The notes beneath the pieces were generated by a model. That model was not told where the DNA came from. It saw only the letters and a list, made by a program, of their open reading frames with translations, and ran no database searches. A stretch of DNA of 64,000 bases from Magallana gigas (taxonomy: Eukaryota): assembly GCF_963853765.1 (NCBI RefSeq), contig NC_088854.1:20150001-20214000 (forward strand), given 5' to 3'. Both the position numbers and the translations under genes were made by a program. This document shows positions 3,210-38,889 of the stretch, one piece after another; positions within the stretch are counted from its first letter, which is position 1; each line of letters opens with the position of its first letter.

Positions 3210-3857
<648 letters not shown>

Positions 3858-4229
3858 ATGCCACCCAAAGTTGGATCTAAAGGTTCTAAGAAAGCTGCCA
3901 CCAAGGCTAAGGCCCAGAGAACTGGGGACAAGAAGAGGCGCAGGAGGAGGAGGGAATCCTACGCTATCTACATCTACAAAGTCTTGAAACAGGTGCACCC
4001 TGACACTGGAGTTTCCAGCAAGGCCATGAGCATCATGAATTCTTTCGTCAATGACATCTTCGAGAGAATTGCCGCTGAGGCCTCCCGTCTGGCCCACTAC
4101 AACAAACGCTCAACCATCACCAGCAGAGAAATCCAGACTGCAGTCCGCCTTCTCCTGCCAGGTGAATTGGCCAAGCATGCTGTCTCTGAAGGTACCAAAG
4201 CTGTCACCAAGTACACCAGCAGCAAGTAA
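3858..4229 (+). CDS. H2B: Histone H2B, subtype A ([12 protein letters not shown])
   Basis: Histone fold [14 protein letters not shown]...AVTKYTSSK. Confidence 0.99.
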
Positions 4230-4261
4230 ACTGCAGGGATATGTAGTTGACATAACCAAAC

Positions 4262-4296
4262 GGCCCTTTTCAGGGCCACACAATTTTTTCGAAAAG
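4262..4296 (+). terminator. H2B 3' stem-loop GGCCCTTTTCAGGGCC (4262-4277) and HDE GAAAAG; repeated in every unit
   Basis: Canonical metazoan histone stem-loop. Confidence 0.95.
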
Positions 4297-5065
4297 CTAC
4301 CATCATTACAATACGCAGTTACTGGTACATTAAATTTGTGTTCAATAGTCATGATTGTTTCACTATCAGAATGAGTACCCATCTTCACAGAAACTGAAAT
4401 TACAACAGGCTGTCACATCTAAGAATAAAAAAAGTTCTGTCTCTATTACTGTACACCAATTACCTATTGATCTTCATTATTCAATATTATCGTACAATTT
4501 AATATATCAAAACAGTGCAATCTACAATATGGTCATAAAATAATGAGCTAAACATTATCAGTGTCTGCTTTTTCAATCATGATTAAAGTCAATTTCACTG
4601 CCCTATATTTTAATAGTTTTAATCCTTTTCACCATAGCAATTTAATATCATTTCAACATGTAAGATAATAAAAATACAATTCTGCAGTTTTCAATTAAAA
4701 TTTCTGATTTCAATTACTTATTCTGTCATGTTTTAGACACTTACAAGAGAAATCAATGAGGGTTGGAGGATCAAATGACATGAATATATTTCTTTACATT
4801 ATCATTAAATCAATGCGCAATAACTGACCTATTTAAATTTAAACAATAGTCATCTTCTGACATGTGAAATGTGGCTTACTTTAATATCATTCTTTGATTA
4901 GGCTAAGTGTAAAAGTGATTGTTCATAACACTCATGTGACTTCCAACCACTCTTATTTCGAGTGCATGTGGCAGGGGAAATGAATGCTAACTCATTACTA
5001 ATGACAGGTAAAAGTGTAGTATGTCTCACAGAGCGTGTCGGTGTATTTCACAGCATTTGTGATAG

Positions 5066-5105
5066 AGGCATCTTTTCTAAAAGTTTGGTGGCCGTTAAAA
5101 CGGCC
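5066..5105 (-). terminator. H4 3' stem-loop GGCCGTTTTAACGGCC (5090-5105) and HDE GAAAAGATGCCT; repeated in every unit
   Basis: Hairpin with HDE 12 nt downstream. Confidence 0.93.
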
Positions 5106-5147
5106 GTTTGTTTGTTGTCAGTGCTGCAAGCACACAGGAGTGGCAGT

Positions 5148-5640
<493 letters not shown>

Positions 5641-5832
5641 TTTTACATGGAATCCACATACACACATCTTACATATTTACTGTGTCGGTTTTCTTATCAT
5701 AGTTTATACTTAATTTATATCATTAACTGTTACGAAATATTAAATATATATACATGTTTATATAAGTGTACTGCACACCTGTACAATTCATCGAAAAGAA
5801 TTAAATTGGTAATAAATGAATGTGCAGTGTGT

Positions 5833-5894
5833 AAAAAAAAAAAAAAACCAAAACAAAACAAAACAAAACAAAAAAAAGACAAAAAGAAAAAAAA
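5833..5894. repeat. A-rich tract, A15 followed by (AAAAC)n-like repeats, in the H3-H4 spacer of every unit
   Basis: Read directly. Confidence 0.9.
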
Positions 5895-6456
5895 CCTGAT
5901 CAACAGGATGTATCAAATGGAATGAGGCAAAAGATATGGTCAGAGCCAGTAGCTAAAATCTAAGAGACATTAACTGATTTCACAAAATTAATGTAATTTA
6001 TTCAAAAGACACAATATGATTCCTGTATTCCTTCTCCATAAAGGAACATACTCCTATTTTAATAATAATTAGCAGATTGACCTTTAGGAACATCATGACT
6101 ATGTTATAAATCCATAATATAAGAATGATAATGGTATTTACATTTTTGTTATAATTAAAGATATCTTCTTATTTCTTTTTTTTAATGTACACATTTGTGT
6201 TAGTTTGAGTTTTGCTCGCAGTGGGACAGTTACCATTTATAGCAATAGTTTTGACAGTTTGTGATATATCAATTCACTGTTTCTCATGTTGTCCATTTGT
6301 TAAGAAAGTTTCCACTGAAATATACTTGTATTGCTGTATTTATTTTATTCATGGGATATATGTGTGCGTGTGTTTATGCGAGCCATCTTACATATATTTA
6401 TTATAGATGAATGCACGCTTATTCAATAATTAGAGTATCAATTGTATGTAATGTGA

Positions 6457-6497
6457 AGGCATCTTTTCTAAAGGTTTTGGTGGCCGTGAAAACGGCC
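6457..6497 (-). terminator. H3 3' stem-loop GGCCGTTTTCACGGCC (6482-6497) and HDE GAAAAGATGCCT; repeated in every unit
   Basis: Hairpin with HDE 13 nt downstream. Confidence 0.93.
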
Positions 6498-6528
6498 GTT
6501 TTGAGTTTGTCAAGAGACAAAAGAGAAT

Positions 6529-7125
<597 letters not shown>

Positions 7126-8627
7126 TGAAAAAATCATTTCGATCCGGCTTTTGCACAGAATTTGTGTACTCCGAAAAATATCGTCCGTGTACTTAGTGGA
7201 ACAAAACTTTTATTCCAATTATAACTAAAACTTATTTGATTTACATAAAGTATTAAACACCATCTATATTCTACAGGATGTAATTGATACTTTAAAAAAA
7301 GCTACAACCCATTAGAATATTGCACAACTTACATTCACTCAATATTTTAACCTATTGATTCTCTGGCATTAAAATGGGAATAGTATATGCTGAATGATCA
7401 TCTGATATCTCAATTCAATTACAATAAACCCAGCATCATAACCCCCCCCCCCCCCAATAAATAAATAAGTAAATAAAGATATAGATTTATCAGAGAGAAA
7501 CATAAAAGATCTATAGTTCAGAAGATCTACGCCATATGCATTTATATGTTTTATCATTCATGATTTAGCTAAGTAACAAAAGAACTTACTTTTATAGTTT
7601 GATTTGCACAGAAATATCCGGGCATGTAAGTCCAAAACACTAGTTGTAATTGTAAATACAGACACAATGAGAGCCACTTGATTCTGGAAAGAGAGGGGTA
7701 AAAAATCTCAGGAAGACTGTATGTTTCAAAGTTCATCATGCAAACTATAAGGTGTAGATTTCAGTTTTTTGCTATTCTGTTCAGTGTCAAAGATAGAAGA
7801 AAGAATAATGTAACCAGAGTAGAATCATAATAAAATAATGTTAAAAAAAATGCATGTTTGTTCTCTCTCTCTCTCTCGCTCTCTCTCTCTCTCCGTATGT
7901 TTCCTTTCAATCAGAATTCAACATCACTAATCTTATGATAATGTGTATCAACCCACTTTCTAGTTAGTCTACAACATATATGAATGATGTACATTATTTG
8001 TTGTACTCATATCGCTTAGCCTTATAAATGTTGGATTTGAATAATGTAAATGCATGTATTTTTTTTTTGTGTATTCACTAAACAGACCTCAATCAATATC
8101 ATGCAGTTAGTTGCAGGAGCAAAATAAAAAACAAAAAACACATTCATAGCTATGTTTGGTGTTTGTTATTTCTCTCATCTCACCCCCCACCCATAATTTT
8201 TCTTTCAAATCTTCATTACTACTCCTGTAAATTTTACTACTCGAGTATTCATACTCTGGTCTGTAGCCGTGAACATTATGAAAAAAGCATGCACCTTGCA
8301 TTACAAACCCTTGCCATGTTACTCATTTACAATTTGTTTATATCTCCTTTTTAATATCTTATTTGTGAGTTTGTGTTGTTAATGCCCCCCCCCCCCCCTT
8401 CTGAACCATACCATAGTCAGATATGAATTAATAATATGTAATAACACATTATCACAGAAAAACTAGAAGGGGCTTAATGTACCTGTATAAAGTGTATATG
8501 AATTCATTGTACTTGCATGTTTCTTTGCAACTTGCATTTGTAATTAAGGCATCTTTTCGAAAAATATTGGTAGCCCTGAAAAGGGCTTTTGTTGAAGGTT
8601 TGCAATCTGCAATGATGCTATGATTGC

Positions 8628-31684: not shown

Positions 31685-31884
31685 NNNNNNNNNNNNNNNN
31701 NNNNNNNNNNNNNNNNNNNNNNNNNNNNNNNNNNNNNNNNNNNNNNNNNNNNNNNNNNNNNNNNNNNNNNNNNNNNNNNNNNNNNNNNNNNNNNNNNNNN
31801 NNNNNNNNNNNNNNNNNNNNNNNNNNNNNNNNNNNNNNNNNNNNNNNNNNNNNNNNNNNNNNNNNNNNNNNNNNNNNNNNNNNN
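31685..31884. other. Assembly gap, 200 N
   Basis: N run; array orientation and subtype differ on its two sides. Confidence 0.99.
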
Positions 31885-33245
31885 ATACCCATTACACGTT
31901 TATTGAATGCATTGCCACACACCGTCAACCTATTACATAAATTTCTATTCATGTTCAATTAATATCCAATTTGATGTTGTTCCAACGCTCTCAAATGCTA
32001 AACACAAATTTAATTTATATCAGTTACCCCTCAAAAATACATTAGTGTGTGAAAAAATTAAAATTTGAGCTCAAATCTCGATCATGCTCATTGGTTAAAC
32101 TAGTGATATAAATGCACGCATAATGTTAGAATGATATGTACTTGAACAATTGCGACATCCGATTCTGATTTTATACAGTGTTTCATGGGGGAGATCATTT
32201 GTGCGTTATTTTATTATTATTATTATTATTCTTTTTCTATTTGAATTGATATCAAAACGGTGAATGTACATTCACCTACGTATGCATGGTCTGCGCATTA
32301 CAAATTAAGGTCTAAGTAAGATGTGCACACGTGAAAACTGCAGTTTTGGCAATGTTATCATGATTGCACAAATGAACTAATTATTTATTCACGTCATTCA
32401 TCACCCGTTTTTTTCCCAATTCATGATCAACTACTACCTTAGTATATCTATATTTATGTTGATATGCTTTTTGACTGTATGTGCATTTGTTAACATAACG
32501 CCGTTTTCTTGCACGTACTATACTGTACATCGCACTTCGCGTAAAGTAGATAATGTAATTCAATTTTCTTTATTTTTCAAAAAATCCTATGACTTTTGCC
32601 ACTGAATATTTTGATATTATTATTAAAGTGACGACTTTTTCTTTCTTTTTTTATTATATTTATTTGTTTTTCTTTCTGACAACTTAAAAAATTTATAATT
32701 CTCTCTTGCTCTTGTTCTGTGTATCGTGTGTTTCTGGGTGTATGGACCTGGTGTGAATTTCACTTAAAAGAAGATATGTATGGGCCTTCTACACAATAGA
32801 CGATATAAAATACACTTATGTCTGTATGTTGGACGTTAAAAAAATGTAATTTTCTGTGAATAATTATCAATTTTAAAGACATTGCGTGACTTTATCGGCA
32901 TTTGGAGTTGGAATTTGCTACTCTGTCCTACGTTTTCCTTTCATTTGAGTTCCTTTAGCGGAGAATTTACGTAAAATATGCAGATGATATGGTAGGGATA
33001 TATCCACACAATGTGATTTTCATAAAATAGCTGCAATCGGTACTCATTAAACGGCGCAGCAAGGATGTAAACATCGGCATCAAAACACACATCGATTCTA
33101 CTATGCATATGCGCTTCGATTTTAAGGGATGTTTTCGAGGACGTCCGCGCCCGCTGTAAACAAAAGCAGCGAGAGCGTGAGACTTCACTATTTCCTCGTA
33201 TTAGTTCGCAGTGAATTGTACAGCGTTTTCGTTTCGTCCGAAGCC

Positions 33246-33845
33246 ATGGCAGACACAGCAACCACAACCCCAGTCAAGAAGAAGGTTACTAAGCCTAAGG
33301 TACCTGCAGCACACCCCAAGTACGTTGATATGATCAGGGCCGCCTTGGAATCCCTGAAAGAGCGTGGTGGATCTTCCAGACAGGCCATTCTGAAGTACAT
33401 AATGGCCAACTTTAAAGTGGGAAACGACGTCAACCCCATTAATGTCCACCTTAAAATGGCACTCAAGAACGGAGTGAAGAAAGGCGCTCTGAAACAAGCC
33501 AAAGGAACAGGCGCCACTGGCTCTTTCAAGTTAGGAGACAAGCCAAAGACAGAGAAAAAACCAAAGGCGAAGAAAGTCACCAAACCCAAGGCAGCCAAAC
33601 CAAAGAAGGCCACAGCTGTTAAGCCCAGGAAGGCGGCAGGGGAGAAAAAGACTGCTGAGAAGAAGAAGAAGTCCCCCAAGAAAGCAGCTGGACCTAAGAA
33701 AGTTAAGACACCCAAGAAGAAGACGGCAGCCAAATCCCCTAAGAAGGCAGCAGCCAAGCCAAAGAAGGCCAAGACTCCGAAAAAAGCAGCAGCAGCCAAG
33801 CCAAAGAAAGCCAAGACTCCCAAGAAGACAGCAGCTAAAAAATAA
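33246..33845 (+). CDS. H1: Histone H1, subtype B, 199 aa, inverted copy
   Basis: ATG at 33246; four-Ala run KKAAAAKPK; stem-loop downstream. Confidence 0.97.
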
Positions 33846-34566
33846 GCAATCATAGCATCATTGCAGATTGCAAACCTTCAACAAAAGCCCTTTTCAGGGC
33901 TACCAATATTTTTCGAAAAGATGTCTTAATTACAAATGCAAGTTGCAAAGAAACATGCAAGTACAATGAATTCATATACACTTTATACAGGTACATTAAG
34001 CCCCTTCTAGTTTTTCTGTGATAATGTGTTATTACATATTATTAATTCATATCTGACTATGGTATGGTTCAGAAGGGGGAAGGGGGGGGGGGCATTAACA
34101 ACACAAACTCACAAATAAGATATTAAAAAGGAGATATAAGCAAATTGTAAATGAGTAACATGGCAAGGGTTTGTAATGCAAGGTGCATGCTTTTTTTCAT
34201 AATGTTCACGGCTACAGACCAGAGTATGAATAGTCGAGTAGTAAAATTTACAGGAGTAGTAATGAAGATTTGAAAGAAAAATTATGGGTGGGGGGTGAGA
34301 TGAGGGAAAAAACAAACACCAAACGTAGCTATGAATGTGTTTTTTGTTTTTTATTTTGCTCCTGCAACTAACTGCATGATATTGATTGAGGTCTGTTTAG
34401 TGAATACACTAAAAAAAAATACATGCATTTACATTATTCAAATCCAACATTTATAAGGCTTAAGCGATATGAGTACAACAAATAATGTACATCATTCATA
34501 TATGTTGTAGACTAACTAGAAAGTGGGTTGATACACATTATCATAAGATTAGTGATGCTGAATTCT

Positions 34567-34797
34567 NNNNNNNNNNNNNNNNNNNNNNNNNNNNNNNNNN
34601 NNNNNNNNNNNNNNNNNNNNNNNNNNNNNNNNNNNNNNNNNNNNNNNNNNNNNNNNNNNNNNNNNNNNNNNNNNNNNNNNNNNNNNNNNNNNNNNNNNNN
34701 NNNNNNNNNNNNNNNNNNNNNNNNNNNNNNNNNNNNNNNNNNNNNNNNNNNNNNNNNNNNNNNNNNNNNNNNNNNNNNNNNNNNNNNNNNNNNNNNN
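34567..34797. other. Assembly gap, 231 N, at the expected position of the (GA)n microsatellite
   Basis: Flanks match the sequences either side of the (CT)n tract in forward units. Confidence 0.95.
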
Positions 34798-35720
34798 ATT
34801 ATTTTATTATGATTCTACTCTGGTTACATTATTCTTTCTTTCTTTCTTCTTTCTTTGACACTGAACAGGATAGCAAAAAACTGAAATCTACACCTTATAG
34901 TTTGCATGATGAACTTTGAAACATACAGTCTTCCTGAGATTTTTTTCCCCTCTCTTTCCAGAATCAAGTGGCTCTCATTGTGTCTGTATTTACAATTACA
35001 ACTAGTGTTTTGGACTTACATGCCCGGATATTTCTGTGCAAATCAAACTATAAAAGTAAGTTCTTTTGTTACTTAGCTAAATCATGAATGATAAAACATA
35101 TAAATGCATATGACGTAGATCTTCTGAATTATAGATCTTTTATGTTTCTCTTTGATAAATCTATATCTTTATTTACTTATTAATTTATTAAGGGGGGGGG
35201 GGGGGGTTATGATGCTGGGTTTATTGTAATTGAATTGAGATATCAGATGATCATTCAGCATATACTATTCCCATTTTAATGCCAGAGAATCATTAGGTTA
35301 AAATATTGAGTGAATGTAAGTTGTGCAATATTCTAATGGGTTGTTATTTAATTGATCAGTTTGTTTTTGCTTTTTTTTAAAGTATCAATTACATCCTGTA
35401 GAATATAGATGGTGTTTAATACTCTATGTAAATCAAATAAGTTTTAGTTATAATTGGAATAAAAGTTTTGTTCCACTAAGTACACGGACGATATTTTTCG
35501 GAGTACACAAATTCTGTGCAAAAGCCGGATCGAAATGATTTTTTCACCTGGCCAATCGGAACGGGTTATTATCGACTAATCGCTGACCACCTCTCTCGGT
35601 CAAGATCACCAATGGCGATTGTCGTTAGTGGGGGTGCTGTGATATCGGAGAGCAGACAGTTAATCGTCGACTCGGTATAAAGTGTATACAGAGGACCGTC
35701 TGGCTCATTCATTCATTTGA

Positions 35721-36143
<423 letters not shown>

Positions 36144-38271
36144 ATTCTCCTTTGTCTCTTGACAAACTCAAAACGGCCGTTTTCACGGCCACCAAAACCT
36201 TTAGAAAAGATGCCTTCACATTACATACAATTGATACTCTAATTATTGAATAAGCGTGCATTCATCTATAATAAATATATGTAAGATGGCTCGCATAAAC
36301 ACACGCACACATATATATCCCATGAATAAAATAAATACAGCAATACAGGTATATTTCAGTGGTAACTTTCTTAACAAATGGACAACATGAGAAACAGTGA
36401 ATTGATATATCACAAACTGTCAAAACTATTGCTATAAATGGTAACTGTCCCACTGCGAGCAAAACTCAAACTAACACAAATGTGTACATTAAAAAAAAAG
36501 AAAAAAGAAGAAGATATCTTTAATTATAACAAAAATGTAAATACCATTATCATTCTTATATTATGGATTTATAACATAGTCATGATGTTCCTAAAGGTCA
36601 ATCTGCTAATTATTATTAAAATAGGAGTATGTTCCTTTATGGAGAAGGAATACAGGAATCATATTGTGTCTTTTGAATAAATTACATTAATTTAGTGAAA
36701 TCAGTTAATGTCTCTTAGATTTTAGCTACTGGCTCTGACCATATCTTTTGCCTCATACCATTTGATACATCCTGTTGATCAGGTTTTTTTTCTTTTTGTC
36801 TTTTTTTTGTTTTGTTTTTTTTTTTTTTTTTGGGTTTTTTTTTTTTACACACTGCACATTCATTTATTACCAATTTAATTCTTTTCGATGAATTGTACAG
36901 GTGTGCAGTACACTTATATAAACATGTATATATATCTAATATTTTGTAACAGTTAATGATATAAATTAAGTATAAACTATGATAAGAAAACCGACACAGT
37001 AAATATGTAAGATGTGTGTATGTGGATTCCATGTAAAACAGCTCTCGCTGCTTTTGTTTACAGCGGGCGCGGACGTCCTCGAAAACATCCCTTAAAATCG
37101 AAGCGCATATGCATAGTAGAATCGATGTGTGTTTTGATGCCGATGTTTACATCCTTGCTGCGCCGTTTAATGAGTACCGATTGCAGCTATTTTATGAAAA
37201 TCACATTGTGTGGATATATCCCTACCATATCATCTGCATATTTTACGTAAATTCTCCGCTAAAGGAACTCAAATGAAAGGAAAACGTAGGACAGAGTAGC
37301 AAATTCCAACTCCAAATGCCGATAAAGTCACGCAATGTCTTTAAAATTGATAATTATTCACAGAAAATTACATTTTTTTAACGTCCAACATACAGACATA
37401 AGTGTATTTTATATCGTCTATTGTGTAGAAGGCCCATACATATCTTCTTTTAAGTGAAATTCACACCAGGTCCATACACCCAGAAACACACGATACACAG
37501 AACAAGAGCAAGAGAGAATTATAAATTTTTTAAGTTGTCAGAAAGAAAAACAAATAAATATAATAAAAAAAGAAAGAAAAAGTCGTCACTTTAATAATAA
37601 TATCAAAATATTCAGTGGCAAAAGTCATAGGATTTTTTGAAAAATAAAGAAAATTGAATTACATTATCTACTTTACGCGAAGTGCGATGTACAGTATAGT
37701 ACGTGCAAGAAAACGGCGTTATGTTAACAAATGCACATACAGTCAAAAAGCATATCAACATAAATATAGATATACTAAGGTAGTAGTTGATCATGAATTG
37801 GGAAAAAAACGGGTGATGAATGACGTGAATAAATAATTAGTTCATTTGTGCAATCATGATAACATTGCCAAAACTGCAGTTTTCACGTGTGCACATCTTA
37901 CTTAGACCTTAATTTGTAATGCGCAGACCATGCATACGTAGGTGAATGTACATTCACCGTTTTGATATCAATTCAAATAGAAAAAGAATAATAATAATAA
38001 TAATAAAATAACGCACAAATGATCTCCCCCATGAAACACTGTATAAAATCAGAATCGGATGTCGCAATTGTTCAAGTACATATCATTCTAACATTATGCG
38101 TGCATTTATATCACTAGTTTAACCAATGAGCATGATCGAGATTTGAGCTCAAATTTTAATTTTTTCACACACTAATGTATTTTTGAGGGGTAACTGATAT
38201 AAATTAAATTTGTGTTTAGCATTTGAGAGCGTTGGAACAACATCAAATTGGATATTAATTGAACATGAATA

Positions 38272-38889
38272 TTTCAATTTCAATTTCTTTATTGCAAAGA
38301 CATACGTCTTATAGCACTTACATGTATAAATGTGAACAATACATGAATAAATAATAATAATAATGGACGGTCAGTCCTTACAAATCTATAGAATAATTTG
38401 TATTTGGAGAATGAAATAACACATATATTATATATATATTGATAGTAATAACAATTGAAATCAGCAAATGACACTTGATATAGTCAAACCATTCTGAGTG
38501 TGAGGGCTTTGTAAATGAATTTTCCTAAATTACACAATTCTTTAATATTGTTAACACTTAATAACTGTATTAATTTGTACATGGATGGTTTACACCAGTA
38601 ATACTTTTTTATGAGCTTTGATCGTAATGCTAAGTACATTGGACATACAAGTATAAAATGATATTCGTCTTCAATGTCTGTTATACAAGTTTTACAAAAT
38701 CTTTTGTCTCTTGGTATATTTTTATGTCGACCTGTTTCAATGAGCAAATTATGTGAGGACAACCTCATTTTGGAAATACATTTTTTATACAACCTTGGTA
38801 TTGATTTTTCTAAATAGTATTGTAAGCAAAAATTATCAACTAAGTGCTTGTAAATAAAACATTTTGTTTCTATTTGCATCTTGCCATGC
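38272..38889 (-). mobile_element. 5'-truncated non-LTR retrotransposon 3' fragment (618 bp): ORF2 C-terminus, 3' UTR, AATAAA and (GAAATT)n tail
   Basis: Absent from the 8 other copies of this site. Encodes RLSSHNLLIETGRH...CKTC-x8-H-x4-C, a CCHC motif typical of the C-terminus of LINE ORF2 proteins. TTTATT at 38288-38293; the tail reads GAAATTGAAATTGAAA on the minus strand. Confidence 0.88.
38484..38889 (-). pseudogene. Uninterrupted C-terminal remnant of retrotransposon ORF2 (about 134 codons)
   Basis: Element-derived part of ORF 38484-38954; no internal stops. Confidence 0.8.

What the first reader, a model, noticed from the sequence alone, without database searches (positions are those of the whole stretch)
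37020..37070. Gap-free inversion junction joining two oppositely oriented histone array arms, with both breakpoints in promoters
Seen: ...CCATGTAAAACA-G-CTCTCGCTGCTTTTG... Left of 37041 is the reverse-complemented H4 upstream spacer, cut 179 bp upstream of where the H4 ATG would be. Right of it is the forward H1 upstream region, cut 70 bp upstream of the H1 ATG. The two sides share only one G, and the join forms a short imperfect hairpin (AAAACAG-ctctcg-CTGcTTTT). Most genes on both arms are transcribed toward the junction. Inference: a non-homologous break-join or replication template switch at two open promoter regions flipped the array, so the locus may be a large palindrome of histone repeats.
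Basis: partly seen in the sequence, partly recalled or inferred. Interest (0 to 1): 0.7.

Follow-up and report, generated by a model that had tools for sequence, protein, structure and literature searches.

The report
Inverted join in oyster histone array
In the Pacific oyster histone gene array, one 5.2-kb piece of a repeat unit lies backwards and is joined without homology to the next unit, but it starts at an assembly gap and I could not confirm the join in raw reads, so it is either an ordinary local rearrangement or an assembly artefact, not a large palindrome.

Summary
At 37041 the reverse-complemented H4 upstream spacer (cut 179 bp from the H4 ATG) meets the H1 upstream region (cut 70 bp from the H1 ATG). 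The join has no extra letters and one shared G.

The wider picture does not hold.
- The inverted "arm" is only 5157 bp (31885-37041). It starts directly after a 200-N scaffold gap (31685-31884).
- The roughly 69 kb of array left of the gap runs the same way as the 34 kb on the right.
- The join is unique in the 564-Mb assembly, and no reciprocal join exists.
- The proposed hairpin is no better than chance (z -0.98).
- Contigs from four public runs show only the normal arrangement on both sides. They also miss the single-copy LINE insertion 1.2 kb away, so this test cannot see one-copy features.

The inverted piece copies no assembled unit. It pairs a rare "edge" variant with the right-hand subarray's variant.

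Best reading (about 0.6): a real non-homologous inverted join, with the other end of the rearrangement hidden in the gap. Main rival (about 0.3): a chimeric read kept at a contig end. Interest is low.

The parts
37020..37070 (.). Inversion junction. The breakpoint is at 37041, and the G there is shared by both parents.
   Evidence: parent overlay, 1-bp overlap, no inserted letters; the only full-length match in the genome.
31885..37041 (-). Inverted partial histone unit of 5157 bp. It covers unit positions 3833-7549 plus 1-1283 of the following unit, read backwards.
   Evidence: minus-strand alignments to every other unit. It is the only inverted stretch in the 108-kb array.
31685..31884 (.). 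200-N run, taken to be a scaffold join between two contigs. The inverted piece starts right after it. I did not fill it.
   Evidence: The matching genome note describes YaHS scaffolding. That YaHS joins are 200 N long is my own knowledge.
31885..33176 (-). Left inverted-repeat arm (H1 upstream region, right-subarray variant). 31946-33176 is the 100% reverse complement of 37041-38271.
33246..33845 (+). Histone H1 gene of the inverted unit, transcribed toward the junction.
   Evidence: Linker_histone, E 7.6e-30.
34567..34797 (.). 231-N run inside the inverted unit. The variant type changes across it, from right-subarray type to edge type C. I did not fill it.
35733..36143 (+). Histone H3 gene of the inverted unit, transcribed toward the junction.
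   Evidence: Histone, E 8.2e-49.
34798..37041 (-). Variant-C block (the stretch carrying H3, the H3-H4 spacer and the distal H4 upstream). It has 1 substitution against the array's first unit and 23-26 against all other units.
37041..38271 (+). Right inverted-repeat arm. It holds an H1 upstream region left without its gene (H1 box near 37128-37134, TATA-like element near 37055-37066) that points leftward across the junction.
38272..38889 (-). 618-bp LINE 3' fragment found only in the unit right of the junction. It gives a unique anchor 1.2 kb from the join.
   Evidence: All four public runs show the empty site.

Best explanation
The join at 37041 is most likely a real DNA rearrangement in the sequenced Pacific oyster. 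A block of the histone array at least 5.16 kb long was turned round and re-joined without homology. It sits between two co-oriented subarrays that have each been homogenised separately. The most likely mechanism is two double-strand breaks repaired by end-joining. One break was 179 bp upstream of H4, in the variant-C/right-type hybrid unit. I infer, from the matching hybrid at the array's left edge, that this unit once began the right subarray. The other break was 70 bp upstream of an H1 gene, one or more units further on. A strand-switching replication event remains possible. The second junction of the event lies in the unassembled 200-N gap. Shown: the join, its breakpoints, the 1-bp overlap, its uniqueness, the extent of inversion in the assembly, and the mosaic variant make-up. 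Inferred: that reads support it, the size of the block, and the mechanism. The consequences are small. One H4 gene and one H1 gene are missing at this join. An H1 promoter without its gene points across the join toward the 3' end of the inverted H3 gene.
For: (1) The join links non-homologous sequence with no extra letters. An overlap assembler cannot create such a join, so it must be present in at least one read. This is inference. (2) It lies 1.2 kb from a unique 618-bp LINE insertion and directly next to rare variant-C sequence. Reads here are therefore uniquely placeable. With the 48-fold HiFi coverage reported for the matching assembly, a single chimeric read should have been outvoted by normal reads from the LINE-bearing unit. 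This is also inference. (3) The inverted piece is not a copy of any assembled unit. Positions 34798-37041 carry about a dozen private variant-C sites shared only with the array's first unit. Positions 31885-34566 match the right-hand type with 0 substitutions. The array's left edge begins with a matching hybrid of variant C and the left type. (4) A random ligation chimera would rarely pair two pieces of the same roughly 0.1-Mb locus in a 564-Mb genome. (5) The same array holds another non-homologous 1-bp-overlap join, a 1223-bp tandem duplication. It lies in gap-free sequence far from any gap.
Against: The inverted piece is shorter than a typical HiFi read and sits exactly at a contig start beside a scaffold gap. 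That is what a single chimeric read kept as a contig tip would look like. No reciprocal or second junction exists anywhere in the assembly. No contig from four public runs bridges 37041, and both sides continue into the normal parents. The join 44-mer is absent from JGI metagenome contigs and from ten other oyster-derived contigs. I saw no raw reads.
Confidence: 0.6

Rival explanations
1. Assembly or read artefact. A chimeric HiFi molecule joined a 5.16-kb fragment from an unassembled hybrid unit, in reverse orientation, to a fragment starting 70 bp upstream of an H1 gene. It survived as the first read of the right-hand contig because the array graph was tangled there.
For: The inverted piece starts exactly at the 200-N gap and is only 5157 bp long. 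The join is a singleton with no reciprocal partner. It is not seen in four public contig sets, in metagenome contigs or in other oyster contigs. A 1-bp overlap is what blunt ligation gives by chance.
Against: Both partners come from the same locus, which is unlikely for random ligation. The join is not a symmetric fold-back, because the arms are separated by a 3864-bp loop. This rules out the usual missed-adapter palindrome. A unique LINE insertion 1.2 kb away should have let many correct reads outvote one chimera at 48-fold coverage. The assembler used is also known to discard reads whose middle no other read spans (my own knowledge, not tested).
Confidence: 0.3
2. One reading: the locus is a large palindrome of two multi-unit arms facing each other. 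This needs either many inverted units hidden in the gap or a wrongly oriented left-hand contig.
For: The gap could hide any number of inverted units. The inverted piece runs past a full unit boundary without a second junction (33176/33177), so a simple inversion must include at least one more whole unit.
Against: Every assembled unit left of the gap (about 9 units, 69 kb) runs the same way as the right arm. That contig carries the array's outer edge at window -37289 and continues into non-array sequence. Flipping it would move its array part away from the gap. The two inverted arms that are assembled are only about 1.3 kb long.
Confidence: 0.07

Closest known systems
Inverted duplications in the chicken histone gene cluster (D'Andrea et al. 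1985, Mol Cell Biol; cited from my own knowledge, not checked here)
   Same: Histone genes of one cluster lie in both orientations because a block was inverted or duplicated in reverse.
   Different: The chicken cluster is an irregular, non-tandem cluster. Here a single partial unit is inverted inside an otherwise strictly tandem quintet array of 7.5-kb units, and the join is known to the base.
Tandem inversion duplications (Reams and Roth 2015), as invoked for the Drosophila Stellate arrays in PMC11195212
   Same: Two neighbouring copies of array sequence lie on opposite strands. The 1.2-1.3-kb arms flanking a 3.9-kb loop look like the product of a strand switch.
   Different: That model uses short inverted homologies in the parent sequences. 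Here the overlap is 1 bp and the hairpin is chance-level. The second junction that would define such a duplication is not assembled.
Palindromic or non-canonical units in human rDNA arrays (my own knowledge)
   Same: Inverted units are embedded in a homogenised tandem gene array and are hard to assemble.
   Different: The gene family is different. Here there is a single event in the assembly and no population evidence.
Contig-end fold-back or chimeric-read artefacts in long-read assemblies
   Same: An inverted stretch shorter than a read sits at the very start of a contig beside a gap.
   Different: It is not symmetric about the join. It carries a variant make-up found nowhere else in the assembly, and it sits next to a unique LINE anchor.

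Membership tests
Two-break inversion repaired by non-homologous end-joining | The junction has 0 to a few bp of overlap and no long homology between the parents. | tested here: met
   the parents share only the G at 37041.
Two-break inversion repaired by non-homologous end-joining | A reciprocal junction joins the two other broken ends (proximal H4 promoter to H1 5' region). | tested here: inconclusive
   all 14 other copies of each parent site are intact, and no half-copy exists anywhere in the assembly. The junction could still lie in the 200-N gap.
Two-break inversion repaired by non-homologous end-joining | The junction is present in independent DNA molecules. | tested here: inconclusive
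   it is absent from contigs of four runs, but so is the single-copy LINE insertion. No raw reads were available.
Strand-switch inverted duplication (tandem inversion duplication or microhomology-mediated template switch) | The sequence flanking the join is duplicated in reverse orientation. | tested here: met
   31946-33176 is the 100% reverse complement of 37041-38271, with a 3864-bp loop between them.
Strand-switch inverted duplication (tandem inversion duplication or microhomology-mediated template switch) | There is microhomology of 2 bp or more, or a quasi-palindrome, at the switch point. | tested here: not met
   the overlap is 1 bp; fold z -0.98.
   only 5157 bp are inverted, and the arrays on both sides are co-oriented.
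Missed-adapter or fold-back read artefact | A perfect palindrome is centred on the join. | tested here: not met
   the left side begins at unit position 3833 and the right side at unit position 1.
Chimeric read kept at a contig tip | The join lies within one read length of a contig end and has no second supporting structure. | tested here: met
   it is 5157 bp from the gap and is a singleton.

The most novel reading that the evidence does not exclude
The inverted block is real and old. It marks the boundary between two subarrays that homogenise independently: a 7505-bp type and a 7550-bp type, 97.4% alike, with different H2B isoforms. On this reading the inverted unit and the array's first unit both keep an older 'edge' variant C because they are shut out of unequal crossing-over. 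The inversion would then act as a recombination barrier that lets one histone locus split into two diverging gene sets.
Probability: 0.2. Interest if true: 0.45.

Novelty: new member of a known kind. Interest (0 to 1): 0.25.

Why it matters
If real, this is a base-resolved inversion breakpoint inside a homogenised tandem histone array. It sits at the border of two subarrays that encode different H2B isoforms. That bears modestly on how concerted evolution is partitioned within one locus, and on whether active histone promoters are preferred break sites. If it is an artefact, it flags a local error at a gap in a reference assembly. Neither outcome changes how histone loci are understood.

Tried and rejected
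- **Hairpin at the join.** It folds no better than shuffles, so I rejected it as a feature.
- **Reciprocal junction.** I searched with both intact parent sites across the whole assembly and by unit-by-unit colinearity. None was found.
- **Public reads.** Only Logan contigs were on offer. The four runs I laid show only the normal parents at 37041 and the empty LINE site. I treat this as uninformative, not negative, because the depth arithmetic shows one high-depth contig per side and low-copy branches are dropped.
- **JGI metagenome contigs.** An exact scan for the 44-mer across the join gave 0 hits.
- **Junction-spanning ORFs.** Those at 37020-37247(+) and 36969-37088(-) are not in the 15-billion-protein collection.
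- **Other oyster-derived contigs.** Ten contigs carrying the same H1, including a Crassostrea angulata scaffold, lack the join.
- **Second array on C3.** Its orientation was read from the search hits instead.
- **Symmetric missed-adapter palindrome.** Rejected on geometry.
- **Literature.** I found no paper on inverted units in oyster histone arrays. One search failed on a term that was too short.
- **N runs.** I neither filled them nor inferred their letters.

Full report
**What is there.** The window is G000:C2:20150001-20214000.
- The assembly has 563,985,803 bases in 29 sequences. This matches the published Pacific oyster assembly xbMagGiga1.1: 564.0 Mb, 29 scaffolds, 185 contigs, 48-fold HiFi, hifiasm, purge_dups, YaHS and manual curation (PMC11267148).
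- The 61,469,542-bp contig carries Magallana gigas RefSeq H1 proteins.
- The window lies inside a tandem array of histone quintet units ordered H2A(-), H2B(+), H4(-), H3(-), H1(-).
- With 80 kb of flanking sequence added, the array runs from window -37289 to 70694, about 108 kb.
- It has two subarrays. The left type has a 7505-bp unit and runs up to 31684; its last four units are 100% identical over the stretch compared.
- The right type has a unit of about 7550 bp and runs from 37041 on; its units are 99.7-99.8% alike.
- The two types are about 97.4% identical and encode different H2B isoforms, KKRRRRRRE against KKKRRKRRE.

**The observation.** The letters are as quoted. An overlay of the two parent sequences shows two things.
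- Everything up to and including 37041 is the reverse complement of the H4 upstream spacer, cut 179 bp from the H4 ATG.
- Everything from 37041 on is the H1 upstream region, cut 70 bp from the H1 ATG.

Only the G at 37041 is shared and nothing is inserted. The alignments on the two sides run for 2244 bp and 1231 bp and end at the same base, so this is a true discontinuity and not a chance resemblance.

The breakpoints are promoter-proximal.
- For H4, the cut is 30 bp upstream of a CCAAT box at -149, and a TATAA lies at -57.
- For H1, the cut lies between a TATA-like element near -90 and the ATG, with an H1 box (AAACACA) at -163.

No transcription start was measured. The suggested hairpin is chance-level: z -0.98, 28 of 200 shuffles fold as well, and the minimum-energy fold does not use it.

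- The inverted side is 5157 bp long (31885-37041) and begins immediately after a run of exactly 200 N (31685-31884). That 200 N is the length YaHS writes at a scaffold join is my own knowledge; YaHS use is reported. The inverted piece is therefore the first 5.16 kb of a contig.
- Left of the gap, every unit has the same orientation as the right arm. The assembly thus shows one inverted partial unit between two co-oriented subarrays, not two facing arms.
- The piece runs backwards from unit position 3833 through 7549 into positions 1-1283 of the next unit, without a second junction. A simple inversion would therefore have to include at least one more whole unit.
- Positions 31946-33176 are the exact reverse complement of 37041-38271. 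This gives inverted arms of about 1.2-1.3 kb around a 3864-bp loop that holds H1(+) and H3(+).
- A second N run of 231 letters (34567-34797) lies inside the piece. I did not try to fill either run.

**Uniqueness and the reciprocal junction.** The 200-bp stretch across the join has one full-length match in the genome, itself. Searches with the two intact parent sites find 14 intact copies of each on C2 and no half-copy other than the join. Unit-by-unit alignment shows no other break at these positions. A second, 86-87% similar array on C3 has all of its 13 detected units in one orientation.

**Make-up of the inverted piece.**
- Positions 31885-34566 match right-type units with 0 substitutions.
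- Positions 34798-37041 differ from right-type units by 25-26 substitutions and from left-type units by 23-26. They differ by a single substitution, plus homopolymer length, from the very first unit of the array 68 kb away.
- This variant C is a third lineage, about equally far from both subarray types, with about a dozen private sites.
- The array's first unit is variant C up to about unit position 6300 and pure left type afterwards.
- The inverted unit is variant C, and after the masked stretch it is pure right type.
- So each subarray appears to begin with a hybrid edge unit, and the right subarray's edge unit is the one that is inverted. No forward copy of that hybrid exists in the assembly.

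**Independent evidence sought.**
- All public runs offered were Logan contigs, and none were raw reads.
- In four runs from three studies, no contig bridges 37041. The left-hand contig runs on into the normal H4 promoter and the right-hand contig is preceded by the normal H1 5' region.
- The bin depths equal the sum of just those two contigs, so nothing else lies there.
- All four runs also show the empty site for the 618-bp LINE fragment at 38272-38889. This is the other single-copy feature of the region, so contigs built from a many-copy array simply do not report one-copy branches.
- The result neither supports nor refutes the join.
- An exact scan of JGI metagenome contigs, a look-up of junction-spanning ORFs and ten other oyster-derived contigs were all negative.

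**Real or artefact.** The points for a real join are these.
- An overlap assembler cannot invent a join between non-homologous sequences with no extra letters, so at least one read carries it.
- The join is flanked by unique markers: variant C on one side and the LINE insertion 1.2 kb away on the other. Reads there are therefore uniquely placeable. At 48-fold coverage, correct reads from the LINE-bearing unit should have outvoted a single chimera.
- Two fragments of the same roughly 0.1-Mb locus are an unlikely pair for random ligation in a 564-Mb genome.
- The geometry excludes the usual symmetric fold-back read.
- The array holds another non-homologous 1-bp-overlap junction in gap-free sequence. 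It is a 1223-bp tandem duplication at C2:20132678 that creates a partial H4 copy.

The points for an artefact are its position at a contig tip, a length below that of a read, its singleton status, and the lack of any independent sighting. I put a real join at about 0.6-0.65 and an artefact at about 0.3.

**Mechanism if real.**
- A 1-bp overlap with no insertion fits classical end-joining of two breaks. It is also what blunt joins give by chance about a quarter of the time, so it does not argue for a microhomology-driven switch.
- Both breaks fall at promoters, which together make up perhaps a sixth of the unit. This is a weak, post-hoc hint that open chromatin was the target. The other junction in the array does not follow that pattern.
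- The local consequences are small. No gene is fused. The join leaves an H1 promoter without its gene, pointing leftward across the join toward the 3' end of the inverted H3 about 0.9 kb away. Whether it fires is unknown.

**Comparison and verdict.** Inverted blocks in histone clusters and tandem gene arrays are a known kind of event. Examples are the chicken histone cluster and human rDNA (my own knowledge) and the tandem inversion duplications proposed for the Drosophila Stellate arrays (PMC11195212). I found no paper describing one in an oyster histone array. Interest is low. The decisive test is to count the assembly's own HiFi reads across 37041.

Noticed in passing
window 38272-38889: A 618-bp 5'-truncated LINE 3' fragment on the minus strand. 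It replaces the two letters GA of the empty site, has no target-site duplication, and is present only in the unit right of the junction. All four public runs show the empty site.
   Followed up: partly
window 1-31684 versus 37041-64000: One locus holds two separately homogenised subarrays. Units are 7505 bp and about 7550 bp and about 97.4% alike. H1 differs by one alanine in its C-terminal tail, and H2B reads KKRRRRRRE on the left against KKKRRKRRE on the right.
   Followed up: partly
G000:C2:20112862-20120562 (loci L032/L033; window -37139 to -29438): The array's first unit is a third variant, C. It mixes left-type and right-type states with private ones up to about unit position 6300, then switches to pure left type. 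The same variant C reappears only in the inverted piece at 34798-37041.
   Followed up: yes
G000:C2:20132678 (locus L034, about position 2678; window -17322): A 1223-bp tandem duplication inside one left-type unit (unit positions 3381-4603). It creates a partial extra H4 copy. Its junction is non-homologous with a 1-bp overlap and lies in gap-free sequence.
   Followed up: partly
G000:C3:37575079-37687842: A second histone array with at least 13 units, mostly spaced 8.6-8.8 kb apart. It is 86-87% identical to the C2 array in the H1 upstream region, and all units have one orientation. A few spacings are irregular (about 13-14 kb), which suggests insertions.
   Followed up: no
window 34567-34797: A 231-N run that is not the length used for scaffold joins in this assembly. 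The variant type of the inverted unit changes across it. I did not fill it.
   Followed up: no
window 33246-33845 and neighbouring H1 genes: A RefSeq model of 437 aa (XP_065933697.1, P0006) is two H1 reading frames from successive units spliced together. This looks like an annotation artefact of the tandem array.
   Followed up: partly
window 37041-37140, minus strand: An H1 promoter without its gene (H1 box and TATA-like element) points across the junction into the inverted spacer and toward the 3' end of H3(+). It could give an antisense transcript. I did not test this.
   Followed up: no
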